DNA of 64,000 bases from Macrostomum lignano (taxonomy: Eukaryota), in contig NIVC01002647.1 of the NCBI GenBank assembly GCA_002269645.1, forward strand, positions 1 to 64,000. The letters run 5' to 3'. Every line of letters starts with the position of its first letter. The first letter of the stretch is position 1. A model generated the notes under the pieces. It did not search any database. It was not told the DNA's origin and saw only the letters and a program-made list of their open reading frames with translations. Positions 560-58,729 of this stretch are shown here, one piece after another. Both the position numbers and the translations under genes were made by a program.

Positions 560-998
560 AGAGACATTGAGTGTGTCATAGAGTTACTGCGATTGTCAGA
601 GTCATTCGGTGAGTCATTGTCATTGAATGTGTCATAGAGTAATTAGGTTTGTCATAGAGTCATTGGGTGTATCATTGAGTTATAGGGTAGGTCATTGAGT
701 GTGTCATAGGGTCATTGGGTATGTCATAGGGTTATTGAATATGTCATCGGGTTATTGGGTATGTCATTGAGTCATTGAGTATGTCATAGAGTCATTGTGT
801 ATGTCATAGGGTCATTGGGTATGTCATAGTCATTGTGTATGTCATAGGGTCATTGCGTATGTCATAGAGTCATTGTGTATGTCATAGGGTCATTGGGTAT
901 GTCATATAGTCATTTTGTATGTCATAGGGTCATAGGGTCATTGTGTATGTCATAGGGTCATTGGGTATGTCATAGAGTCATTGTGTATGTCATAGAGT
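560..998. repeat. ~20-bp minisatellite (GTCATTGGGTATGTCATAGG-like), about 20 degenerate copies
   Basis: Repeated gtcattg(g/t)gtatgtcatag(a/g) units read directly. Confidence 0.9.
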
Positions 999-1065
999 CA
1001 AGCAGTCAGCAGGTGAGTGATAGGTTACCTTGTTATTAATGGAATGAATTCGCTTGTCCCCGCAG

Positions 1066-1747
1066 CCGAAGCCGCCCTCCAAAGCGCCATTTTAATGCTA
1101 ACGATAGAGGGCCCCAGCAATGCGGAAGCCGCCGCAGTCGGCAGACGCTTGCAGCAGATGGCTCTGACTACGTCGGCTAAAACTTCGGCAGCAGCGGTCA
1201 ACACCGGGACAGCTTCCAACACTGCCGACCTCCTTGACCGAATGTTGTGCACGCCGCAGCCGCTGCAGCCGCCACCGCCTCCTCGGCCACCTCCGCCGCC
1301 CATGCTCGGCGCTCATCAGCATCAGCAACCTCAGCAGCCTCAGCAGCTCCACCAGCAGCAGAATCGATGGTTGACCTCCACCATCGCGCACGCGACTGTC
1401 GGGCCAGCCGACCGCGGCGTCAGCACCCCGGAGGCCGTGTCCAACTCCTCTAGCGGCGTGTCGCTCAGCCTGCCGCCAGCAGCGGCATCCGTATGCAAGC
1501 AGCAGCAGCAGCAGACATCTCTAGAGCGGGAGTGGTCCAGGCGTATCTCCGCCGGCCTCTGTCCGCACTGCGACGCCCCGGCTGCCACTGACGAGCAGCG
1601 CCACTTCCACGAGCGCGTGCACGCCATGGACGAGCTGTACCGCTGCCAGCTGTGCGCCTGCCGATTTGCCTATCCCTGCTCTCTAAGGATGCACAACAAC
1701 TTACACGCCAATCGTAGCCTGTTCCTGCAGCAGCAGCAGCAGCATCG

Positions 1748-1780
<33 letters not shown>

Positions 1781-1912
1781 CTATCCAGAGCAGCAGGACC
1801 TCGTGCCGCAACAGATTGCATCTTACCAGCAGCAGCAGCAACAGCAGTACGCTGCCGCTGGAGGTAAAATGACTCTTCCAGCCTCTCATCAGCAGCAGCA
1901 ACAACAGCAGTC
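1066..1912 (+). CDS. Exon of a C2H2 zinc-finger protein with polyQ/polyP tracts; reading frame runs into the downstream LINE
   Basis: Two C2H2 fingers (CPHC...HERVH; CQLC...HNNLH); acceptor-like cttgtccccgcag ending 1065; possible donor G|gtaaaa at 1864. Confidence 0.7.
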
Positions 1913-1964
1913 GCTAATGTGGGACCGAACGGTAAAGCGGACCGATACCCCGATCGGGCCGGTT

Positions 1965-2075
1965 GAGGGTTCGGTGCAGGAGGGCCATCAACCTCCTGTG
2001 GCATGCGACTGCGTCCACGACGCGCCCCTGGACTCCGGAGACTGTAATTCGTCCTACCGGATGACGAAATGTCGC
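1965..2075 (+). ncRNA. Candidate HDV-like self-cleaving ribozyme in the LINE 5' region
   Basis: P2 GCGACT 2005-10 / ATGTCGC 2069-75; P3 GCG 2011-13 / CGC 2021-23; L3 TCCACGA; P1' GCCCCT 2024-29; P1.1 GG 2030-31; P4 TCCGG/CCGGA; J4/2 ACGAA. P1 5' strand imperfect. Confidence 0.6.
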
Positions 2076-2255
2076 TCTTCACGGGGATGCTGCGAAAATT
2101 CCAACCGAATCAACGACGACCCTCCGGCCGCCCCCGATGACAACGCCAACCTACATCGGGTTCTCCGTCTACGCGGAGGCGACAGTAACGTCACAGCCTC
2201 GCCCCGCCAGACCAGAAGCAGCAAAAAGCGAGGAAGGGGACACAGGTCCGGCTCA

Positions 2256-3525
2256 GAGCTCCAGGTCCTCCAGTTCAATTGCAACGGACTGCAGGCCCGC
2301 CGCACGGAGCTAGCCGCAAGACTTGCCCGTACCCAACCCGTCGCTGTCCTGCTCCAGGAGACCAAGCTCCGCCCAGGAGCGGCCATCCACCCGCCACAGG
2401 GTTACCACGTGGCGGCCCGGGAAGACGGCGAGGCCAAACATGATCCCCAGCCCGTCGCCACCGCGAATACCACCCAGGGATCTAACGATGGTATGCCTGC
2501 GGGAGAGGAGGCTCCGACCACCCGCCGCCTCACCCGTCCTAGGTGCCGCCTCCGATGGCCCCAGGACAAGACCGGCTGGTGCAACGGCTGCAGAAGTGGC
2601 CGCTCAGCCTGCTCCAACCGCAACCTCGTGGCCTGCCCCATCTGACGACCCTCTGGTCCACACTCCCCCGGACCCGCCGGAAGCGCGGAGAGCGCCGGAG
2701 AGCGGGCCGGCCGACAAGAAAGCAGGCCAGTGGCACTGTTCGGACTGCAGCAAGGTCATCCGCAGGAACAGCTACAGCGTCCAGTGCACCAGCTGCAGCG
2801 GGTGGCTCCACCTCAAATGCAGCGGCCTCGCTACCGTCAAGCAATATTCAGTGCCATTCGAAGGCCCGTGCTGTAGGCACGCGAACCAGCCCCCAGCTCT
2901 GCGCCGGAACGCTCAAGCCCCCCGACCCGCCGAGGGAGCCAACCGGCCCGACCCGCCGCCCCTTCCTCAACCTGAGGGCGACGCCGAACCTGCCCGAACG
3001 GCCGAAAGCCAAAAAACTGCAAAAACAAACAGCGCCCGACGGGGAGGGGAGGAGTGCTGATACTGGTTCGCGATGACGTCCCCTTTAAGAATCCTGAAGT
3101 CAGCAGGGGCGGCCTGCTCGACTACGCGGCGGTGACCATCTGCCCGGCCGCTGTTGGCCAGATACAATTGGTGGCGGTCTACGCTCCGCCCAATAGCAAC
3201 CAGCGCGCGGAGGACAACTGGCTCCCAGCCTGGTCAGACATACCGGTCGCGCCCCGCACGGTGATTGCCGGCGATTTCAATGGCCATGGACACTGGACAG
3301 CCATCAACCTGAGGACGAGAGAGGAGACAGCATCGAGGGGTGGGCTAGCGACCGGGGCCTCCATCTTGGCAACCGCGAGGATGCCCACACGCGGACCAAC
3401 CCGGCGACAGGCGGCCTGAGCTGCCCGGATATCACTTGGTGTTCCGGCGATCTTGCCGCCCACGTCAGGACGTCGTGGAGCACCTCCGAGGACCTCGGAA
3501 GCGACCACCTGCCTATCACCTTCAA
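2256..3525 (+). pseudogene. LINE apurinic endonuclease domain split by a ~200-codon insertion that contains a PHD finger
   Basis: N-half (QFNCNG...QETKL...GYHVAARED) ends ~2430; WHCSDC..QCTSC..WLHLKC..GPCC at 2731-2875; C-half resumes with GGVLILV at ~3048; several 1-nt frameshifts. Confidence 0.8.
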
Positions 3526-4249
3526 CCTCTCCAGAGACAAGCAGGCCAAACGTCTCCAACGTCAGGCCCAGTGGAGCTACGCGAAAGCGGACTGGACGTC
3601 CTACGCGGCCCGACTGGACGCGGAGGAGGAGACTTTGCAAGGCATCACCACCGCGCAGAAATCGAGCACGGACGCGGACCACCAACAGCTCTGCGACATC
3701 ATCCTCGGAGCAGCGACCGGCAGTATCCCGCGCGGCGCGCGTCGCAATACCGGCAAACCTTTTTGGACCGAAGCGTGTGCCGCCGCTTGCAACCAGTGCA
3801 GCGCCGCGCGGAAAAAGGCCGAGCAGACCAAGACGGTGGAGGACATCTCGGCGTACCACCTCGCCAGACGCCGCGCCGATGAGACTATCAAGGCCGAGAA
3901 GCTCCGCTTCTGGGACGAACGAGTCGCGGAGTTGTCCGTCAACAGCGACCTCTTCGGTCTGGCCCGGGCGATGCGGGGCGAGCCCCCGCCGCCCCCCCCC
4001 CCCAACGCGGCCCTCGTCATCCCGGCCGATGAGACCAGATGCAGCCGGCAGAGGACTGCGGTCACGGACAAGGAGAAAGCGGATGCCTTCTGCACCCTGT
4101 ACGCGGACGTGTCTCGCGTGGAGCGCAGGAGGTCGGATCGCGGGGTCAACAGGTGTGCCTACGCCGCCATCAAAGCGCGCTGCTGCGAGCCCGACCACAA
4201 GCAACAAATCTGTGGCGCCTTCTCCGCCGTGGAACTCAAGCAGGCCCTG

Positions 4250-4852
4250 AGGTCGCTGAAATCCAGGAAGAGCCCCGGCCCGGACGGAGTGTCCAACGAG
4301 ATGCTCAAGCGTCTCCCTGAACGGACCGAGCAGCGACTACTTGACCTGATCAACAAGGCCTGGCTCAGCGGACACTGCCCACACCAGTGGCGCAGGGCGA
4401 CTATCATCCCGATCCCGAAAACGCGGCAAACCGGCTGACGACCCGGGTTCGTATCGCCCGTCGCCCTCACCAGTTGCATTGCCAAGGTCGCGGAACGGCT
4501 GGCGCACCAAAGGCTGAACTTTCTGCTGGAATCCAAGGGCTCTCTCAGCAAAGTCCAAGCTGGTTTCCGCAAAGGACGCTCGTGCGAAGAGCAGATCGCC
4601 CGCATCGCCCAGCTTATCTTCGACGGGCTGGAAGGGACTCCTGCGCTTAGAGCGATCCTCTGTTTACTCGACTTCAGCAGAGCCTACGACAAGGTGTGGC
4701 GGAAGTCTCTGATCTGCAAGCTCGAGAAGCTGGGAGTCCCCGCCTGTGTCCTGCGCTGGACCAACAGCTTCCTCAGCGACAGGAGAGCGCGCGTCCGATT
4801 CGGCAATAGCCTCAGCAGAGAGCGCATCTTCCGGGAAGGCCTGCCCCAAGGG
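4250..4852 (+). pseudogene. Reverse transcriptase, N-terminal half only (no YADD motif)
   Basis: RT motifs from KSPGPDG to GLPQG spread over three frames. Confidence 0.9.
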
Positions 4853-6696
4853 CATAATTTATTTCACCCTATCTTTATCCTGTGTTTGCGTTTTACACTA
4901 TATGTGGATTGTCTGTTGAGTCTTATAAGCTTTTTGATTTCTAATTAAATTGGTCAGGTGTCTAATGCTCCAAGATTTCCTTTGTTCAAAATCTCACTTA
5001 GTTCCTGCCGCAGATACTATAATGGCTAGATTGATCTATATTAGGCATATTTAATTGGTTATAACACTTTCTCTACTTAGGTCAGTAGCAAGGAAGGATA
5101 TGTAAGCTATTTTATGATAAGAAAGGCAGTTAGGTTAGCAGAAGAAAAGCCTTTTTTGCAGCCGGATTGTACATCAGAAAGAGTCGAAGAAGGCAATAAA
5201 GATCTGGCGGAAGGCGCCAATGCCTTAAGCTTGGGCCAATAGACAACTGATGCACTTAGCTTCTAGTGAGTGACCAATCTGGCTATTTATAGCATCCGTA
5301 GTTCCTGTTGAAGTGTCTAACAAACTGGAATTCCTCGGCAGTGACATCTCCATAATCCCAAACAATCCCTAGTTTAACATCGCGCTTGATTCTTTTTTGT
5401 CGGGCTATGTTTTTTTGTGCTGCTAACTGCTTTTGCTTGTGTGTATTTTGCTTTTGCTTAGCTGTTTTTTTCAATTTATGTTTTGTTCTATTTCAGTAAA
5501 CAAGTGTCGCTAGTGCTTGCTTGTTTTGTAAATTTTTATTTAATAATTTAACTGGAACGCTTTCAAAAGTATGATGACGTTTCATTTTTCAAATATAAAA
5601 ATTTTAAATTATAACTGTAATTTGCTTTTTGTACTACTTTCATTTTCGTTCATAGGTTAAAGTGGATTCCGAGAGCCGGCAACTATGCAATGTTTGGCTT
5701 TCACGCCCCTTGTACTACTACCGCAGTAGTATAGTTGTTTTTTATCTTTCGATAGCCTTCGGCCTAGAAACTTTTGTCTCCTTGTCCTCACTTATAAGAT
5801 TTGTCTTTGTCTTTCCAGGAATCGCAACACTTCAATTTAATTCAAACTTTATCGATCCGATTTGTTTGCATTAATTAGCTTTTCGTTTTATTACCGGGTT
5901 CTTTTCAATTAACTGCCAATTTAAAGTTGTTTGTTTTTTTCGCTAAATAAGCTAAATTTTCTTTTGTGTGTAGTCTTACACAGTAGCGAGTCCCCCCCCC
6001 CCGTTTTCCTCAACGTTTGTTTTACTGCTTGAATTGTGTTGATTCTTTTTATTGTTAATACTGCCCAGAGAAATTCCACTTACTAATGTAAGATGTTAAA
6101 ATAAGTCATCATACTTTCTATTCATTACCGCAAAGTCAAAGTAAGCTGGGGCTTAATAAAGTGGCTTAGATTAAAGTTAGAAAATCACGTGATACAATTG
6201 TTATCAGTTAGGGGGTGGTCCATGTACACTCACTGGCGGTCGGATAAATGTACATTGGCAAGAGTTTTTTGAACCGGCTTGGGCGCCATAAAATACCTGG
6301 TATGTGTCTGGGGTTCACGCGCATTTCGCACACTTATGATTTGACGCGTGTTTACACTGCGCTATGCTAAAACTGAAATTTATATCCGACTTGAAGGCGA
6401 AATTAGGCGGGCAGCCACTCCAGTCTAAAATTTGCTATTTCAAGATATAGATACATAAATACTGGGTCCAAATTCTCAAGTCTCTCCTTGGTGCATTTGC
6501 AAATGTAGAAATTGTGAAAGCGTTTCGATACACTAGCTAGCTAGCTAGGACTGTGCGCACAGAATCAAGCAAATTCACTTTTGCAGAGCGGCGACAAGCA
6601 TGTGGAAATGTTGTTTTCGATTTAAACTATCCGAGAAAAAATGTAAAGTTGCATTGTCTGTACTGACTGAATCATAAATAATCAGTGTGACGGCCA

Positions 6697-6898
6697 GGGG
6701 AGACAGTTACGATGCCAGGGGAGGCAGCGGGGATGCCAGGGGAGGCAGTGGGGATGCCAGGGGAGGCAGTGGGGATGCCAGGGGAGGCAGCGGGGATGCC
6801 AGGGGAGTCAGTGGGGATGCCAGGGGGGGCAGCGGGGATGCCAGGGGAGGCAGTGGGGATGCCAGTGGAGGCAGTGGGGATGCCAGGGGAGTCAGTGG
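6697..6898 (+). repeat. 21-bp G-rich minisatellite (GGGGATGCCAGGGGAGGCAGT), left part of an array split by the transposon
   Basis: About 9-10 units, same orientation as the array at 10781-11990. Confidence 0.95.
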
Positions 6899-9800
6899 GC
6901 CTCCCCTGAAGAGAGAGTTTGGTCAATGAAATATACCCTAAAAAATATTGATTTCCCATGAATCTATGACCCAACAGACGTCCAAAAAAGCAATAGTTGA
7001 AATCCTATCGCATTGTCTGCATAGTGTACAGGTATGCTAATTAGTACAGTGATTTTTAGTACCAGGTAGGTACTACAAGAAGAACAAGAAGGTCTGAGAG
7101 AACATGGCAACCATCCTGCAGCAACGAAAATGCTAAAACAAGGTAGAATTTACGTTTCTGTTCATTCTCTGTCACTTATGGTTCATTAATAGTGTTTTTA
7201 TTACCTGTCCATACCTGTGTACACCTGAAAATTATGTTTTTGCACACTATATTGTGCTGAATTCACACCAGGGCGTGTATCTTCACACTTATCATTGTAC
7301 GAGCGTATTTACATGTATATGCTCGTGGCTCAAAATAAATTGAATTCAATATTCTGGCTGCAGACTTTTCTTTCTGTTTCAATAAGCTATTTGGCCCATA
7401 GACATCTCCAGATGATGAGGCAGTCAGAACTAGGAGACAAGTTAATTCCAGTATTTTCTTCAGAACAAAAAGAAATAGCAAGCAGCAGCTGATACACTTT
7501 TACTAAACTTTTACTGAAATTAAAGTTACTGTAAGTGAGACAACTAGCTATGAAAATGAAAAGGGTATATTTGAGTGAGATACTCTAGGTCGACATTTAT
7601 AAGCTGAGTGAAAGCGTACAATACACGATTGAGTGTAATATGGGGTGGGGCGATCAATAATTTGGGGGAATGTACGTATGAGCTACATAAATATGCATGT
7701 AATATATTAGACTAATTGAGCGTGCAGGTAGAAATACAAGAAAGAATAATAAAAAATACCGCGACACTGGCTGCTCCAGAACAATGCCAAACAACAAGCG
7801 CTCACATGAAGAAAATCGAAGATGTGTGTGCATCTTGTGCTTTTGGAAGGGAGACCGACCGCTGACAGCCACTCTTGAAGCGCTGATTGAATGCCATGTG
7901 CTGCCAGGCTTCGCTGACCATCGTGGATTTCTGCCTTTAAGCATCTGCAACTCCTGCAGAATCAAGCTGATGTCACAAAGCAGCCGTGCACCAACACCTC
8001 TGCCGCCAAAAATGCCCTACGAGCAAGTTATTGCAGATCTGCGCTGTCTTCCGCCACTCACTCGCGAACGCCCCGATTGCAACTGCTGGGTGTGCCATGT
8101 GGGCTCCAGCAGAGCCAACAAGAATGTGGCTGTATATCACCCTTTCATGCCAGATGAGTCTGCTGCTGGTATTGCGACGCCACTTGGTCGCCCTCCAAAT
8201 AAGGCACCTGGGCCGATGGGAGACAGTGTCGTCAAACGCTGTGAGACGTGCTCATCGCCAGTGGCACGTGGATTGAGGCACCAGTGTGGACAGGCGGCAA
8301 AACTGCGCTATCTTGATGCCCTAAGCCCCTACTCAAGGGAGCACGTAGCCTGCAGTCTTCTGCGTGAGAAGCTGGGTGTAGCCACCTCTTCTGGCTCCTT
8401 AGCAACTGCAAGCCTGACTTCTGGCACAGGTGGGCGCCCACTCCAAGTTCAAGTGGCTGGTACATCAACTACCGAGATTGCGTCGGTCCAGCATAGCACT
8501 ATGCGAGCCGTAAAGACTGCACTCAACCTCAGCACCAGTCAGACGCTACGTGCGGCTCAAGTGATCAGAGAAGCGTCCGGCAGCAAAAAGGCCGTGCAGT
8601 CTGGGCTGAAGGAGTTTCTGTTTGCTGAAGGTCAGAGTGTCGCCAAGTTTTTTACAGCTGAGCAGCGGCAGTTTTTCCGCAAACAGCCTAATGGACAAGA
8701 GTGTGTGATCGAACGGTCTGTCGTGTTCTGCCGGGATGTATACGCTTTTCTGGCGCATGTCAGTAACTCGAGAGGCACTGCTGAGATGCACCAGAGAGTG
8801 AAACTTGCGATTGATGGAGGAGGCAATTCCTTAAAGGTGTGCGTCAGCGTTACCGTGGATGACAGAGGATGCACTTCGTCTGCCCAATTTAACCGATTTA
8901 TGGACTCTGGAGTGAAAAAGATCCTCATCCTGGCCCTTGTTGAGGATGTCAAAGAATGCTACCAGAACGTTAGTGTACTAATGTCAACCATCGACATCAG
9001 CTCCATTAACTTCACGTTGGCCTGCGATTTTAAACTGGCAAACATAATCAGCGGGATCCAGAGCCATTCTTCATCGCATCCCTGCCTGTACTGTGAGGGC
9101 AGGCCTCCATGGGAAGTACCAGCACAAAGGAGGACGCTCGGCTCAATTCGACACCTGGCAAGTGAGTTTCAGGCAGCTGGTGGACACCAGTCTCTAGCCA
9201 AAAACTTTGCCAACTGCGTCCAGCCTCCACTGCTACCTGGGAGCGATTCTGCTGAACTGCTGGACGTGGTACCACCGCCAGAGCTGCACATGATGCTTGG
9301 CATTGTGAACCGATTGCTTGATGCTCTCAATGCAAGCTGGGGTGGCAACAAGGCCTACGAGTGGGCCTATGAAGCAGGCATCTGCAGGCAGCAGTATCAT
9401 GGAGGTTGCCTGGAGGGCCCAGCGTGCAAAAAGCTCCTTCTGAAGGCGAGTGAGCTGTGGAGCGTGCTGCCTCCACACCTGAAGCTCTACGCAACAGCAC
9501 TTCAAGACTTCAACGCTGTGCGCGAAGCTTGCTTTGGCCAAAGTCTGGCAGCTGATTACAGTCTCTACATTGCTCGCTTCCAGACGACATGTAGGTACCT
9601 CGAGCTTTCAGTTACGCCAAAGATGCACGCGCTTTTTGACCATGTGCCAGCGTTCTGCGGCAAGTATGGCAAGGGGCTTGGCAGCTTTAGTGAACAGGCT
9701 GTTGAATCAGCCCACAGTGACTTCGAAGCCACCTGGCAGCGCTATAAGCGCCCCCTAAATCATCCTCAGTATAGCACGTGTCTACTGCAATCCATCATAA

Positions 9801-10783
9801 ACTATAATTCATTTCACATCTGAGCCAAATATGTCATAACTTGTAACTTGCAAATTCCAATTTACTACTGCCAAGATAACTACAAGTAAACTGTTGAAAA
9901 AAGTAGTTAGTAGTTAGTACATTGGTTTTGCTGTTACATTCAATGGTTGTATTTTGACAACCCACTAAACTCGTATGTTTGTATTGGGTAAAGCAGAAAG
10001 TTGTCGCAGGTTTTAAGGCCTTCTATGAAATGAAGTGCTTGAAGTACATGTAATGGTACTGTATCACAGTAGCTGGAACTTGAATTCGGGTTTGCTCTAC
10101 ATCAGTCAATGCATGTCTTTTTTATTCTGCAGCACACAAGGCTTCCAGAAATTCTGTAGGCTTATCTTCGCAAATTGCAAGAACTTTCTGTTTTACTAAA
10201 TATTGTACTAGCTTTAACAACTATTCTAGCTATTTTACTCTAGTTATTCTACCCGTGTAGTCATTTGCCGCCAAAATAAGCTTGTAATTCCCAATGACCT
10301 CTGCTTATGCTTTCTGTTTTTGCGAAACTTTTCTCTCTTCAATAGTTACTGGCTTTGTTTTGACTCTCAGTGCCAGTCTATCGCTGCACTGCTCCAAAAA
10401 CTTTAAAAAATTGAAAACGTTACTAGGAAAACACAAGCTCCATGTGTAAATTAATCTCAGTCAGGTATGGACAGGTAATAAAAACACTATTAATGAACCA
10501 TAAGTGACAGAGAATGAACAGAAACGTAAATTCTACCTTGTTTTAGCATTTTCGTTGCTGCAGGATGGTTGCCATGTTCTCTCAGACCTTCTTGTTCTTC
10601 TTGTAGTACCTACCTGGTACTAAAAATCACTGTACTAATTAGCATACCTGTACACTATGCAGACAATGCGATAGGATTTCAACTATTGCTTTTTTGGACG
10701 TCTGTTGGGTCATAGATTCATGGGAAATCAATATTTTTTAGGGTATATTTCATTGACCAAACTCTCTCTTCAGGGGAGGCGTG
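6899..10783 (+). mobile_element. Chapaev/Transib-like DDE DNA transposon with ~318-bp TIRs
   Basis: 6899-7217 is the reverse complement of 10462-10780 with no mismatch seen by eye; encloses an intact transposase; right end reads ...GGAGGCGTG followed by GGCC, and GGCC also occurs at the left junction (alternative 4-bp TSD GTGG). Confidence 0.85.
7784..9823 (+). CDS. 679-aa RAG1-core-like (Chapaev/Transib) transposase with N-terminal Chapa-type zinc finger
   Basis: H-x7-C-x2-C...P-x3-C-x2-C N-terminus; AIDGGG (D, 8813), LACDFKL...HPCLYC (D, 9026), ELHMMLG, EGPACKKL, TPKMH..FDHVP, SEQAVESAH (E, 9704) parallel RAG1/Transib motifs; no stops or frameshifts. Confidence 0.85.
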   Translation: MPNNKRSHEENRRCVCILCFWKGDRPLTATLEALIECHVLPGFADHRGFLPLSICNSCRIKLMSQSSRAPTPLPPKMPYEQVIADLRCLPPLTRERPDCNCWVCHVGSSRANKNVAVYHPFMPDESAAGIATPLGRPPNKAPGPMGDSVVKRCETCSSPVARGLRHQCGQAAKLRYLDALSPYSREHVACSLLREKLGVATSSGSLATASLTSGTGGRPLQVQVAGTSTTEIASVQHSTMRAVKTALNLSTSQTLRAAQVIREASGSKKAVQSGLKEFLFAEGQSVAKFFTAEQRQFFRKQPNGQECVIERSVVFCRDVYAFLAHVSNSRGTAEMHQRVKLAIDGGGNSLKVCVSVTVDDRGCTSSAQFNRFMDSGVKKILILALVEDVKECYQNVSVLMSTIDISSINFTLACDFKLANIISGIQSHSSSHPCLYCEGRPPWEVPAQRRTLGSIRHLASEFQAAGGHQSLAKNFANCVQPPLLPGSDSAELLDVVPPPELHMMLGIVNRLLDALNASWGGNKAYEWAYEAGICRQQYHGGCLEGPACKKLLLKASELWSVLPPHLKLYATALQDFNAVREACFGQSLAADYSLYIARFQTTCRYLELSVTPKMHALFDHVPAFCGKYGKGLGSFSEQAVESAHSDFEATWQRYKRPLNHPQYSTCLLQSIINYNSFHI

Positions 10784-11990
10784 GGCCGGGATGCCAGGGG
10801 GGGGGCAGCGGGGATGCCAGGGGAGGCAGTGGGGATGCCAGGGGGGGAGGCAGCGGGGATGCCAGGGGAGGCAGTGGGGCTGCCAGGGGAGGCAGTGGGG
10901 ATGCCAGTGGAGGCAGTGGGGATTCCAGGGGAGGCAGTGGGGATGCCAGGGGAGGCAGCGGGGATGCCAGGGGAGGCAGTGGGGATGCCAGGGGAGGCAG
11001 TGGGGATGCCAGGGGAGGCAGTGGGGATGCCAGTGGAGGCAGCGGGGATGCCAGTGGAGGCAGCGGGGATGCCAGGGGAGGCAGTGGGGATGCCAGTGGA
11101 GGCAGTGGGGATGCCAGGGGAGTCAGTGGGGATGCCAGGGGGGCAGCGGGGATGCCAGGGGAGGCAGTGGGGATGCCAGGGGGGGAGGCAGCGGGGATGC
11201 CAGGGAGGCAGTGGGGCTGCCAGGGGAGGCAGTGGGGATGCCAGGGGAGGCAGTGGGGATGCCAGGGGAGGCAGTGGGGATGCCAGGGGAGGCAGCGGGG
11301 ATGCCAGGGGAGGCAGCGGGGATTCCAGGGGAGGCAGTGGGGATGCCAGGGGAGGCAGCGGGGATGCCAGGGGAGGCAGTGGGGATGCCAGGGGAGTCAG
11401 CGGGGATGCCAGGGGAGGCAGTGGGGATGCCAGTGGAGGCAGCGGGGATGCCAGGGGAGTCAGCGGGGATGCCAGGGGAGGCAGTGGGGATGCCAGGGGA
11501 GGCAGCGGGATGCCAGGGGAGGCAGTGGGGATGCCAGGGGAGGCAGCGGGGATGCCAGGGGAGGCAGCGGGGATTCCAGGGGAGGCAGTGGGGATGCCAG
11601 GGGAGGCAGCGGGGATGCCAGGGGAGGCAGTGGGGATGCCAGGGGAGGCAGTGGGGATGCCAGGGGAGTCAGTGGGGATGCCAGGGGAGGCAGTGGGGAT
11701 GCCAGGGGAGGCAGTGGGGATGCCAGGGGAGGCAGCGGGGATGCCAGGGGAGGCAGCGGGATTCCAGGGGAGGCAGTGGGGATGCCAGGGGAGGCAGCGG
11801 GGATGCCAGGGGAGGCAGTGGGGATGCCAGTGGAGGCAGTGGGGATGCCAGTGGAGGCAGCGGGGATGCCAGTGGAGGCAGCGGGGATGCCAGGGGAGGC
11901 AGTGGGGATGCCAGGGGAGGTAGTGGGGATGCCAGGGGAGGTAGTGGGGATGCCAGGGGAGGCAGTGGGGATTCCAGGGAGGCAGTGGGG
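10781..11990 (+). repeat. 21-bp G-rich minisatellite, right part, about 57 units
   Basis: Tandem GGGGATGCCAG(G/T)GGAG(G/T)CAG(T/C); ORFs here are repeat artefacts. Confidence 0.95.
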
Positions 11991-12994
11991 GAAGGGCAGC
12001 CGCCCTTTCTCACCTGACAGTCGGTGCAGGAGCAAGGTGCTATGCCGCCAGCCTTGTCTCCCAGCTCGCATTTAACCAGACTGGAGTTCATGGGGCACAT
12101 AGTAGAATGGGGTGTTGGGGTGCTGAAATTGGTCCGTTTGTCTGCGACCATTAGACGATAAATGAACTAGTACGAGGTAGTAGTAAACAAATATAATTTA
12201 AGACTATTGATGAATTGTTAATGGACTTCGCTTGTTGTATTTGCAGGGACTAATCGATATTAGTGTGTCTGTGCTTCTGACCTCTGTATTGCAATGGTGT
12301 TTCATGTTTAGAGATTCGAAAAAAAACTCGAAGAACTGCCTTTTCACATTTGTAGCAGTTCTCTCAGTCGCATGGATATCTAACAATTTCGATATTACAG
12401 TTTGTCATCCAACATCATTATCCAACCGATTGAAAAAGCAAAGTTAATTTTTTTCGTATAAATTTATCAATTTTATAATCTGAGGCCTTTTGTCAATTGT
12501 TAATAAAAAGTACAACTTCATTGATTTTTGTGTTATGAATTTGCACAATCCTGTTTTGATCCTTCGCTATTGTTAGTCACATTCGCGAGCACAAGGTAGC
12601 CGCTAGCTCCGCTACTCGTGTAAGTAGCATGTTAAGTAAATACCCAACTGTCTATCGCTTTGACGGCGCACTTCGATATTTCGCACTTCTTTGTTCGCTT
12701 CTGTTCTATTGGCTAAATAGACGATTCAGTCTTTCATCGCCTGCACCCCTTGCTCCTAACCTAATGTCATACTCGTGTGCACTTCCCGATGCTCTGCTGT
12801 TTTCTCCGGGTTCGATGCCTGTTATTTTTTGTTCTAATGTGCTTCTCTTTGGTGTGTCGGAGTCCTAACCTCTGCTTCGCAACTTTTCCGCTCCCTGCGA
12901 ATTTGCATGAATTTTCCTTTTTTTAATTATACTGTCATTGTGGCAAGCGGAGAGCAACATAGCTCCCAGAACTGCAGTTGCCGGGTCAACGCCA

Positions 12995-57637: not shown

Positions 57638-58729
57638 ATGAGAGTTCTACCGATGGAAACAGTCGAGGCAGACGCCAATCCGAGTAGTGCGGCGTCGCAG
57701 CAGCCTACAGCTACCTTCGCCAGCAGCAGACATTGTTGCAGCGGACGCAGTCTGCGAGACAGTGGCTCCAGAGCTCTGCAGATGGCCCTGGCCGAACTGC
57801 GTGCACCTGGACTGAGCAACGCGATTTCGTCCAGCCACCAGCTTCACGTGAGAGCCGCTTGGCTGCTGGCCTTCCTCACATCTCTGGCCGTCATGCTGTA
57901 CCACCTGACCTCGCTAACCCGTAAGCTCTTGTCCAACGAAGTGTCAACTCGGCTAGAGGCCGAGAGCATCGATTTCGACATGCCCGATCTGTACTTTTGT
58001 CCCGAGGCGCCAATGTCTGGCAGTAGATTTCTCAACCTTAGCCGGGAAAACTCAACTATGTTGGCCGCCTGGATGAACAATACGAGAAAAAAGTTCGCAG
58101 AATTCGTGTCCGACGCACCTGCCGGGCCGGACTATCGGAATCAGTTTCACAGAGAACACCTGGCCGATGCGGTTGTCCACTCAGTTCCATTCTGGTTTCT
58201 AGCCAGCAGGTTGGCGCATTCAATCGAGCAGTTCGTTGTTTATGCCGCCATTGTGGACGCCAGCCAGGGCCTGGTAGGAGCCACGCAGATACCCGTCGAA
58301 GCGTTCGACCATCCGGAGCACATTCGCTGCTTTCGAGCCATCCTTTCGATCGAAAACCGCAGTCGACTGCGCACGGTCGATGCGTACGTTGAGTTTGTGC
58401 TGATGCTGGACCGCTATCACCCTTGGATGCCTCGGGGAGAGTACTCGGCCCCTAGCATCAACGGCTTGAAAGTGTCCGATTGGACTCTGGCAGAGTCGCC
58501 AGCGTCATCAAAAGCTGTTGGTGTTCGCCTCTACCTGCCGCCCGTCGGCGAGTATCCGAGCCACTTTGCAAGCCATTTTTTGCTGCAGCTAGGCAGCCTG
58601 AATCTTACCGGTCTAAGCGACTACCTAGTAGTGAATAATCTGGCCACTAGGTGGGTAGCCGACTTTATTGTTGCCAGTCCAGCCACGGCCTGTCGATACA
58701 AGGACCGTTGTGTCACGTTATTGACGTAG
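57638..58729 (+). CDS. Divergent DEG/ENaC (amiloride-sensitive channel-like) N-terminal part; TM2 not found, may be a pseudogene
   Basis: pre-TM1 PGLSNAI...RAAW, TM1 LLAFLTSLAVMLYHL, DMPDLYFCP (FPAVTIC equivalent), RCFR, GVRLYLPPVGEYP...LQLGSLNLTGL. Confidence 0.6.
   Translation: MRVLPMETVEADANPSSAASQQPTATFASSRHCCSGRSLRDSGSRALQMALAELRAPGLSNAISSSHQLHVRAAWLLAFLTSLAVMLYHLTSLTRKLLSNEVSTRLEAESIDFDMPDLYFCPEAPMSGSRFLNLSRENSTMLAAWMNNTRKKFAEFVSDAPAGPDYRNQFHREHLADAVVHSVPFWFLASRLAHSIEQFVVYAAIVDASQGLVGATQIPVEAFDHPEHIRCFRAILSIENRSRLRTVDAYVEFVLMLDRYHPWMPRGEYSAPSINGLKVSDWTLAESPASSKAVGVRLYLPPVGEYPSHFASHFLLQLGSLNLTGLSDYLVVNNLATRWVADFIVASPATACRYKDRCVTLLT

What the first reader, a model, noticed from the sequence alone, without database searches (positions are those of the whole stretch)
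2061..2260. Ubiquitin C-terminus mimic (LHRVLRLRGG) directly upstream of the LINE endonuclease: possible DUB-processed leader
Seen: 2151-2180 encodes LHRVLRLRGG, 9 of 10 identical to the ubiquitin C-terminus LHLVLRLRGG. It is in frame with an ATG at 2061 (40-aa leader) and ~25 aa before the APE start. No ubiquitin fold precedes it. Established: cellular deubiquitinases cut after LRLRGG, and cytopathic pestiviruses use ubiquitin inserts to process polyproteins; Ingi/L1Tc-type LINEs place a 2A ribosome-skipping peptide at this same position. Inference: this family may use a host DUB site in place of 2A, freeing the EN-RT protein from whatever N-terminal sequence it is translated with. I am not aware of a description of this in LINEs but cannot search the literature.
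Basis: partly seen in the sequence, partly recalled or inferred. Interest (0 to 1): 0.85.

Follow-up and report, generated by a model that had tools for sequence, protein, structure and literature searches.

The report
Ubiquitin-tail motif replacing 2A in LINE
A truncated flatworm jumping gene (LINE) carries a near-perfect copy of the last ten residues of ubiquitin at the spot where its relatives carry a self-separating 2A peptide, and a second diverged element keeps the same motif; whether host enzymes cut there is untested.

Summary
Window 2151-2180 (+) encodes LHRVLRLRGG, 9/10 identical to ubiquitin residues 67-76, about 5e-5 expected per window by chance. No ubiquitin body precedes it.

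The organism is Macrostomum lignano. Window 1920-4854 is a LINE fragment truncated at both ends. It replaced 533 bp of a C2H2 zinc-finger gene paralogue. The reading frame is therefore open from the host ATG at 1044, not only from the ATG at 2061.

About 20 relatives were examined. Nearly all carry a 2A/StopGo peptide (…LLLRAGD(V/I)ExNPGP) upstream of the endonuclease. The closest ones share the layout leader, 2A, Arg-rich linker, endonuclease. Here the NPGP signature is absent (RLRGGDSNVTASP).

One independent, strongly diverged element (locus L004) ends its 59-aa leader with LLHVMRLRGG. Most of its shared codons differ synonymously from the window's, and the flanks do not align. So the motif looks like a selected trait of this lineage, not decay in one copy.

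Cleavage by host deubiquitinases is plausible but unproven. It is weakened by the missing ubiquitin fold, because bare LRGG peptides are poor substrates for deubiquitinases. Whether the motif arose from a remodelled 2A N-terminal half or from capture of a ubiquitin 3' end is unresolved. I found no prior description.

The parts
1044..1919 (+). 5' part of a host C2H2 zinc-finger/polyQ gene (two fingers at 1560-1622 and 1644-1706), cut off after ...QQQSLM. It is not part of the LINE and is fused in frame to it.
   Evidence: Window 565-1919 aligns to the paralogous locus L002 5471-6876 at 90%. The intact paralogue P0037/PAA93933.1 continues SLM|QQRSPHECPQCGRGYVRAGNLRNHMRRFHPY* with no intron. The junction sequence is shown.
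1920..4854 (+). LINE fragment of 2935 bp, sense orientation, truncated at both ends, with no poly(A) and no target-site duplication. It replaces 533 bp of the host locus (L002 6877-7409).
   Evidence: junctions CGCTAATG|TGGGACC and CCAAGGGCA|TAATTTATTT. Pfam finds Exo_endo_phos, Exo_endo_phos_2 and RVT_1. It is 41% identical to the full-length LINE protein P0001. The rest of the element is not in the window.
1920..2150 (+). LINE N-terminal leader or 5' region. It is in frame with the endonuclease, has no stop, and contains an internal ATG at 2061. It is Cys-rich and has no recognisable fold.
2151..2180 (+). The ubiquitin-tail motif LHRVLRLRGG (ubiquitin residues 67-76 with L69R).
   Evidence: The same motif (LLHVMRLRGG) ends the leader of the diverged element L004.
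2181..2204 (+). DSNVTASP, the position where relatives have D(V/I)ExNPGP. The 2A signature is absent here.
   Evidence: Alignment of 15 2A regions from relatives and the HMM hit AhLa.lLLLrAGD / ANLHrVLRLRGGD. No NPGP occurs anywhere in the six frames of the window.
2205..2258 (+). Basic linker RQTRSSKKRGRGHRSGSE between the motif and the endonuclease.
   Evidence: P0006, P0010 and P0014 have Arg-rich linkers of about 40 aa at the same place.
2259..2426 (+). N-terminal segment of the AP endonuclease (LQVLQFNCNG...LLQETKL...GYHVAARED).
   Evidence: Pfam PF03372, E 8e-6. Alignment A2 gives 47-50% identity to P0010 and P0014.
2427..3041 (+). Insertion of about 205 aa inside the endonuclease. It holds a Cys4 knuckle C-x11-WCxGC-x6-C (2544-2612) and a PHD-like finger (2731-2874, a different frame in the window but in frame in L003/P0038).
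3042..3532 (+). Remainder of the AP endonuclease (GRGGVLILVRDD ... GDFNGH ... SDHLPI), with one frameshift at about 3294 in the window.
   Evidence: Pfam PF14529 and PF03372. L003 has +G at 3294, which restores the frame.
4271..4854 (+). N-terminal part of the reverse transcriptase, cut after FREGLPQG. It has two indels at about 4418 and 4456 relative to L003.
   Evidence: Pfam RVT_1, E 4e-14..

Best explanation
The ten codons belong to the N-terminal leader of a single-ORF, APE-type LINE. Its group has the layout leader, 2A, optional PHD finger, endonuclease with a Cys4 knuckle insertion, RT, RNase H.

In this flatworm lineage the StopGo/2A signature DxExNPGP has been lost. The site reads as the ubiquitin tail instead: LH(R)V(L/M)RLRGG, followed by a basic linker and the endonuclease. 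The motif is kept under protein-level selection in at least two diverged elements.

The mechanism I think most likely is that it does the job 2A does in relatives, separating the short leader (or any adventitious upstream sequence) from the EN-RT protein. It would do so post-translationally, through cleavage after GG by host ubiquitin-C-terminal hydrolase or USP-type proteases.

Shown: the sequence, its position, 2A in relatives, absence of NPGP, and conservation in L004.
Inferred: selection, functional equivalence to 2A, and cleavage by host deubiquitinases.

The copy in the window is itself dead. It is a fragment truncated at both ends that replaced the 3' end of a host C2H2 zinc-finger gene in Macrostomum lignano. 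That accident created a chimeric ORF, which GenBank annotates as a hypothetical protein.
For: - Motif real and far beyond compositional chance.
- Same architecture as the nearest relatives. P0006, P0010 and P0014 have leader, 2A, Arg-rich linker, then APE N-terminus; P0010 and P0014 are 47-50% identical in that APE segment. More distant relatives have 2A-PHD-APE. Published LINE 2As sit in this same N-terminal region of ORF2p (PMC3708506).
- The independent element L004 was retrieved through its knuckle motif, not through the ubiquitin tail. Its 59-aa leader starts at an ATG 12 codons after an in-frame stop and ends in NLLHVMRLRGG. Leader versus leader scores 40, reached by 6 of 5000 shuffles, and only the motif aligns. 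Seven of the nine shared residues use different codons (CTA/CTG, CAT/CAC, GTT/GTC, CGT/CGG, CTA/TTA, CGC/AGA, GGA/GGG). The conservation is therefore at the protein level.
- The inserted copy was young. In the duplicate locus L003 the LINE ORF is unbroken from 1920 to about 3990, and the window's frameshifts are 1-2 nt indels. RLRGGDSNVTASP is thus the sequence of the then-active element, not later decay.
- Typical 2A N-terminal halves match the ubiquitin tail at only 3-4 of 10 positions, against 9/10 here (hand comparison of the sequences).
Against: - No ubiquitin fold precedes the motif.
- Deubiquitinases need an exosite contact with the ubiquitin body and hydrolyse LRGG peptides very poorly (bioRxiv 10.1101/2020.01.30.926881). 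From my own knowledge, RLRGG/RLKGG reporters for viral proteases have low background in uninfected mammalian cells.
- Only two lineages carry the motif, and both sequences in hand are defective. The window copy is truncated, and L004 lacks the APE N-terminus and has frameshifts.
- No further copies could be retrieved.
- In the window element, cleavage would expose an N-terminal Asp. By the Arg/N-degron rule (established knowledge) this is destabilising.
- The 2A HMM aligns weakly to the same residues (0.9 bit, E about 0.02). Part of the resemblance may therefore be inherited from 2A rather than from ubiquitin.
Confidence: 0.35

Rival explanations
1. Inert relic of 2A. The motif is what is left of the N-terminal half of the family's 2A peptide (…A-H-L-A-L-I-R-L-R-A-G-D…). 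It was remodelled by a few substitutions, and the likeness to ubiquitin is coincidental. The lineage simply lost StopGo and makes an N-terminally extended EN-RT protein, with no cleavage.
For: - It occupies the same position as 2A in collinear relatives.
- The 2A HMM places AhLa.lLLLrAGD on ANLHrVLRLRGGD as the best site in the leader, E 0.013-0.024.
- P0010 already reads IRLRAGD, one A>G change from RLRGGD.
- Inactive, mutated 2A-like sequences are common in LINEs (PMC3708506).
Against: - Getting from a typical 2A half (3-4/10 identical to the ubiquitin tail) to 9/10 needs about five directed changes.
- L004 keeps LH-V-M-RLRGG across saturated synonymous sites while the rest of the leader is unalignable. 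A neutral relic would not do that.
- L004 lacks the D after GG.
Confidence: 0.2
2. A selected motif with a different job. The conserved LH-V-x-RLRGG would be a binding or regulatory element, for example a mimic of the ubiquitin beta5/tail surface (H68 and V70 are part of the Ile44 patch), an RNA- or ribosome-interacting basic stretch, or a localisation signal. It would not be cleaved.
For: - Conservation in two diverged elements.
- The residues kept (H, V, L/M, R, L, R, G, G) are the solvent-exposed or tail residues of ubiquitin, whereas the buried L69 is replaced or deleted (sequence comparison plus established ubiquitin structure).
- The missing fold argues against efficient deubiquitinase cleavage.
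Against: - No direct evidence for any partner.
- The position is exactly where relatives place a separation signal.
- The invariant GG is best explained by a protease or hydrolase site.
Confidence: 0.2
3. Captured ubiquitin gene fragment without function. A 5' template switch onto an abundant (poly)ubiquitin mRNA, or another recombination, added the 3' end of a ubiquitin coding unit to the LINE 5' region. Only the tail is still recognisable.
For: - 9/10 identity to ubiquitin.
- Weak extra echoes of ubiquitin upstream: D-x-N before LH in both elements, EDG and GETITIE in L004 against LEDG and GKTITLE.
- LINE 5' ends are plastic (PMC3708506).
Against: - The ubiquitin body versus either leader is not above shuffles (620 and 1588 of 5000 shuffles score as high), and Pfam finds nothing.
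- A neutral fragment would not keep only the last 9-10 residues intact in two diverged elements.
- I could not compare with the M. lignano ubiquitin gene.
Confidence: 0.1
4. Pure chance match in a GC-rich, Arg/Leu/Gly-rich reading frame.
For: A genome-wide scan covers thousands of windows. At 5e-5 expected per window, a 9/10 hit somewhere in a genome is not impossible.
Against: - It is in the coding frame of the element and at the 2A position.
- It recurs in L004, which was found independently of the motif. Leader-versus-leader alignment is reached by only 6 of 5000 shuffles.
Confidence: 0.03

Closest known systems
2A / StopGo peptides in the N-terminal region of ORF2p of single-ORF APE-type LINEs (L1Tc/Ingi: Heras et al. 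2006; Rex1, Crack, L2, CR1 and Ingi clades: Odon et al. 2013, PMC3708506)
   Same: Same place in the protein: a short leader, then the signal, then a linker or PHD finger, then the endonuclease. The nearest relatives of this element carry canonical 2A there. The residues L-x-L-R-x-G-D overlap the N-terminal half of 2A.
   Different: The defining D(V/I)ExNPG|P is absent (DSNVTASP), so co-translational peptide-bond skipping cannot be expected. The sequence matches ubiquitin far better (9/10) than any 2A does.
Natural ubiquitin fusion precursors (polyubiquitin, UBA52, RPS27A) processed by cellular deubiquitinases
   Same: The sequence LRLRGG lies directly before the protein to be released. A basic stretch follows the GG, as in RPS27A (from my own knowledge).
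   Different: Those precursors contain the whole 76-residue beta-grasp domain, which deubiquitinases need. Here only residues 67-76 are present.
Ubiquitin-coding inserts in cytopathic pestivirus (BVDV) polyproteins
   Different: The pestivirus inserts are complete ubiquitin monomers or multimers captured from host mRNA. Here there is no ubiquitin body and no evidence of recent capture.
LXGG / RLRGG cleavage sites of viral papain-like or OTU proteases (coronavirus PLpro, arterivirus PLP2, tymovirus PRO)
   Same: A short linear ubiquitin-tail-like motif that works as a polyprotein cleavage site without any ubiquitin fold.
   Different: Those sites are cut by a protease the virus itself encodes. 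This LINE group encodes only APE, RT, RNase H and zinc fingers.

Membership tests
2A / StopGo recoding peptide | C-terminal signature D(V/I)ExNPG|P | tested here: not met
   The window reads RLRGG-DSNVTASP. No NPGP occurs in any of the six frames of the window. Relatives do have it.
2A / StopGo recoding peptide | Location in the N-terminal region of LINE ORF2p, upstream of the APE domain | tested here: met
   The motif lies 26 aa upstream of the APE start. This is collinear with P0006, P0010 and P0014 and with PMC3708506.
2A / StopGo recoding peptide | Sequence similarity of the upstream (tunnel-interacting) half to family 2As | tested here: inconclusive
   An HMM of 15 relatives' 2As hits ANLHrVLRLRGGD at 0.9 bit, E 0.013-0.024 for this one leader. 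Ubiquitin's own tail also aligns to the same HMM region, at -1.9 bit.
Ubiquitin / ubiquitin-like domain | Beta-grasp fold of about 70 residues N-terminal to the diglycine | tested here: not met
   No Pfam ubiquitin hit at E<=10. Ubiquitin body versus the leaders is not above shuffles (620 and 1588 of 5000). No other ubiquitin-like stretch appears in any frame. AlphaFold models have pLDDT 41-44 with no fold, which is weak evidence from single sequences.
Ubiquitin / ubiquitin-like domain | C-terminal tail L-R-L-R-G-G | tested here: met
   The window has LHRVLRLRGG and L004 has LLHVMRLRGG.
Deubiquitinase-processed linear ubiquitin fusion | Cleavage after Gly76 by host deubiquitinases | not testable with these tools
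   This needs reporter or biochemical assays. The literature says LRGG peptides without the ubiquitin body are very poor deubiquitinase substrates.
Viral LXGG site cut by an element-encoded papain-like or OTU protease | A cysteine protease domain encoded by the same element | tested here: not met
   Pfam finds only Exo_endo_phos, RVT_1 and PHD in the window. The full-length relatives P0001 and P0024 add only RNase H.
APE-type non-LTR retrotransposon (LINE) | AP endonuclease followed by reverse transcriptase in one sense-strand ORF | tested here: met
   Pfam PF03372, PF14529 and PF00078. It is 41% identical to the 1420-aa protein P0001 (APE-RT-RNase H) over 62% of the query. The clade (Ingi/Vingi, Nimb or I-like) was not assigned, because no reference RT library was available.

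The most novel reading that the evidence does not exclude
A flatworm LINE lineage has exchanged co-translational StopGo (2A) for post-translational cleavage by host deubiquitinases acting on a bare ubiquitin tail of about 10 residues with no beta-grasp domain. The motif may have evolved in situ from the N-terminal half of 2A by a few point mutations (…IRLRAGD… to …LRLRGGD…). That would imply that some cellular ubiquitin-tail proteases can process linear LRLRGG sites in vivo. It would also mean retroelements can use them as a portable 'self-cleaving' tag.
Probability: 0.25. Interest if true: 0.8.

Novelty: new variant of a known kind. Interest (0 to 1): 0.55.

Why it matters
Single-ORF LINEs are known to free their EN-RT protein from upstream sequence with 2A peptides. 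A lineage that replaced 2A with a ubiquitin-tail motif would be a second, host-dependent solution to the same problem.

It would be a natural experiment on how little of ubiquitin a deubiquitinase needs. It would also be a possible new short separation tag for biotechnology.

Even if the motif is not cleaved, it appears to be a short motif under selection at the most plastic end of a retrotransposon. It is directly testable with GG>AA reporters, and M. lignano has established transgenesis (from my own knowledge).

The practical annotation point is smaller. GenBank proteins PAA56246.1 and PAA91395.1 are host-gene/LINE chimeras, not genuine proteins.

Tried and rejected
- The long ORF 1044-2648 as a LINE 'ORF1-like' region fused to ORF2. 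Rejected: 1044-1919 is a host C2H2 gene, shown by the LINE-free paralogue L002/P0037.
- An intron starting at 1916 (GTGGGA). Rejected: the paralogous gene is 972 nt for 323 codons plus stop, so it has no intron. Its 3' exon sequence is nowhere in the window.
- 'Decayed 2A in an old dead copy' was my working idea. It was weakened because the duplicate locus L003 has an unbroken LINE ORF of about 690 codons and the window's frameshifts are 1-2 nt indels. L004 also conserves the motif.
- Hidden ubiquitin body in other frames or a diverged fold. Nothing found with tblastn, Pfam, shuffle tests or two AlphaFold runs.
- More copies of the family. There are none in the window. Three word-index protein searches gave only the same-locus cluster, P0001 and P0039, and the last gave nothing. 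The viral contig scan gave nothing. The metagenome scan gave 11 more distant loci, all of those with readable upstream sequence being of the 2A type.
- MAFFT alignment A1 of the window and L004 conceptual proteins misplaced the motif and was not used.
- RT-based clade assignment was not possible. There was no reference set, and the supplement of PMC3708506 is not held.
- Identifying the organisms behind SRR31628394 and SRR24660096 from the literature returned nothing.

Full report
**1. What the sequence shows**

Window 2151-2180 (+) encodes LHRVLRLRGG. tblastn with ubiquitin aligns ANLHRVLRLRGG to STLHLVLRLRGG and finds no other ubiquitin-like piece in any frame of the region. From the six-frame composition, a match of 9/10 or better to LHLVLRLRGG is expected 5e-5 times per window. 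One is observed, and the next best matches are 6/10. The ATG at 2061 is in frame, and the endonuclease begins at 2259, 26 residues after the GG.

The frame does not begin at 2061, though. It is open from ATG 1044 to the stop ending at 2648.

**2. Where it sits**

An exhaustive HMMER search with window 1902-2646 found a near-identical protein, P0005. Its cluster holds three GenBank entries from Macrostomum lignano:
- PAA56246.1 (P0005)
- PAA91395.1 (P0038, 982 aa)
- PAA93933.1 (P0037, 323 aa)

P0037 shares the N-terminal 290 residues, which carry two C2H2 fingers and polyQ. After ...QQQSLM it continues QQRSPHECPQCGRGYVRAGNLRNHMRRFHPY*, whereas the window continues WDRTVKRT....

The locus of P0037 (L002) has no intron there. 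It aligns to the window as follows:
- Window 565-1919 matches L002 5471-6876.
- Window 4855 onward matches L002 7410 onward.
- Window 1920-4854 therefore replaces 533 bp of host DNA.

The junctions have no poly(A) and no target-site duplication. The element stops inside the reverse transcriptase after FREGLPQG, and its remainder is not in the window.

So the upstream 'leader' beyond 1920 is a host gene fused in frame by accident. The LINE is truncated at both ends. L003 (the locus of P0038) is the same insertion at 99.4% identity, so all GenBank occurrences of the motif are duplicates of one event.

In the LINE region L003 differs from the window by five substitutions and six 1-2 nt indels. 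With L003's bases the LINE frame is unbroken from 1920 to about 3990. The copy was therefore young when fixed, and RLRGGDSNVTASP reflects the active element, not later decay.

**3. What the relatives have at that place**

The closest full-length protein, P0001 (41% identity, APE-RT-RNase H), was called from an internal Met. Its contig reads ...LASLLLMRAGDIELNPGP-PHD finger-...-APE in the same frame upstream.

Of the other proteins found with the window's N-terminal region, nearly all that extend far enough upstream carry a 2A or a clearly 2A-derived motif:
- P0006: ALLLLRAGDVERHPGP
- P0010: HLALIRLRAGDIELNPGP
- P0011, P0014, P0025, P0028, P0029, P0032, P0033, P0035 and P0039 likewise

Eleven further metagenome loci are more distant. 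Seven have readable upstream sequence, and all seven show 2A-PHD-APE.

P0010 and P0014 are the nearest in the APE N-terminus (47-50% identity). Together with P0006 they have exactly the window's layout: leader, signal, Arg-rich linker, APE N-terminus, Cys4 knuckle insertion, rest of APE. This matches the published picture of 2A in the N-terminal region of ORF2p of single-ORF LINEs, sometimes with a PHD finger between 2A and APE (PMC3708506).

The window has no NPGP in any frame.

**4. Is the motif a lineage trait or a one-off?**

One hit of the exhaustive search, P0036, was found through the knuckle motif RCRLRWPTDRDTWCTGCRSGRTGC (54% identity to window 2505-2615). It comes from a 1110-nt Logan contig, L004.

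Its ORF starts at an ATG 12 codons after a stop. After 59 residues it reads ...EDHNLLHVMRLRGG, followed by the knuckle, a PHD finger and the middle of the APE. It has frameshifts and lacks the APE N-terminus.

Apart from D-x-N-x-LH-V-(L/M)-RLRGG the two leaders do not align. The leader-versus-leader score is reached by 6 of 5000 shuffles and consists of the motif only. The bodies alone are at chance.

Seven of the nine shared residues use different codons. The conservation is therefore at the protein level across long divergence.

**5. Origin**

Two routes remain open.

*(a) Remodelling of 2A.*
- An HMM of 15 relatives' 2A regions aligns AhLa.lLLLrAGD to ANLHrVLRLRGGD as the best site in the leader (0.9 bit, E about 0.02).
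- P0010's IRLRAGD is one A>G change from RLRGGD.
- However, ordinary 2A halves match the ubiquitin tail at only 3-4 of 10 positions.

*(b) Capture of the 3' end of a ubiquitin coding unit.*
- Identity is 9/10, and there are faint echoes upstream (D-x-N; EDG and GETITIE in L004).
- These echoes are not significant (620 and 1588 of 5000 shuffles score as high), Pfam finds nothing, and two single-sequence AlphaFold runs gave no confident fold (pLDDT 44 and 41).

**6. Mechanism**

The position and the invariant GG make a separation site the most economical reading. Host ubiquitin-tail proteases would cut after GG and release the EN-RT protein from its leader, or, as in this chimera, from 370 residues of unrelated protein.

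The main objection is biochemical:
- Deubiquitinases use an exosite on the ubiquitin body and hydrolyse LRGG peptides very poorly (bioRxiv 10.1101/2020.01.30.926881).
- No ubiquitin fold is present here.
- The element encodes no protease of its own.

I therefore rate the explanations as follows:

| Explanation | Confidence |
|---|---|
| Deubiquitinase cleavage | about 0.35 |
| Conserved motif with another role | about 0.2 |
| Inert 2A relic | about 0.2 |
| Functionless ubiquitin capture | about 0.1 |
| Chance | about 0.03 |

**7. Comparison and novelty**

The motif works like 2A in placement, but it fails the defining NPGP test. It has the ubiquitin tail but fails the fold test. It resembles viral LXGG sites but lacks the cognate protease.

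Four literature searches found 2A in LINEs and ubiquitin inserts in viruses, but no ubiquitin-tail motif in a LINE. I rate it a new variant of a known kind, namely the N-terminal separation signal of single-ORF LINEs. The interest is moderate until more copies and a cleavage assay exist.

Noticed in passing
window 1044-2648 (and L003 8001-10961): GenBank 'hypothetical proteins' PAA56246.1 (521 aa) and PAA91395.1 (982 aa) of M. lignano are chimeras. They join the 5' part of a C2H2 zinc-finger/polyQ gene to a LINE fragment. The intact paralogue is PAA93933.1, which has a third finger and a stop.
   Followed up: yes
window 2427-3041; also P0001, P0006, P0011, P0012, P0017, P0024, P0026, L016: The AP endonuclease of this LINE group carries a large insertion between the GY...AAR strand and the GGV.ILVR strand. 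The insertion holds a conserved Cys4 knuckle, C-x11-WCxGC-x6-C. L016 has three such knuckles in tandem. In the window/L003 and L004 lineage a PHD finger, which relatives place upstream of the APE, also lies inside this insertion.
   Followed up: partly
window 2624, 2992, 3294, 3991, 4418, 4456: Six 1-2 nt indels distinguish the window from the 99.4%-identical locus L003, and these cause all the LINE frameshifts in the window. They look like assembly indel errors or very recent mutations in one duplicate.
   Followed up: partly
L004 445-470: L004 reads ...GCTAETNPGPRP between the knuckle and the PHD finger. ETNPGPR is identical to the end of P0039's 2A. This may be a displaced 2A remnant and hints at a domain rearrangement in this lineage. 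The window has DPLVHTPPDP in the same knuckle-to-PHD interval.
   Followed up: partly
window 560-1024: A satellite with a 20-bp unit (AGAGTCATTGGGTATGTCAT, about 22 copies) lies directly upstream of the host zinc-finger gene. The same array is present at the paralogous locus L002.
   Followed up: partly
window 6296-12102: About 5.8 kb is present in the window but absent from the paralogue L002. It contains a 679-aa ORF (7784-9823, no Pfam hit) and 21-bp tandem arrays of GGGATGCCAGGGGAGGCAGTG at 6693-6899 and 10788-11990 (57 copies, GC 0.72). It may be another mobile element.
   Followed up: no
window 57638-58726: An ORF here has an amiloride-sensitive sodium channel (ASC) domain fragment, Pfam E 8e-10. 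It is probably an exon of a host gene.
   Followed up: no
L016 1807 and window 1920: The N-terminus of P0010 reads MEASCSWDRC..., and the LINE part of the window begins WDRT.... If this is homologous, the window copy lacks only a few codons of the element's ORF, and the true leader is longer than 40 aa. It may be coincidence.
   Followed up: no
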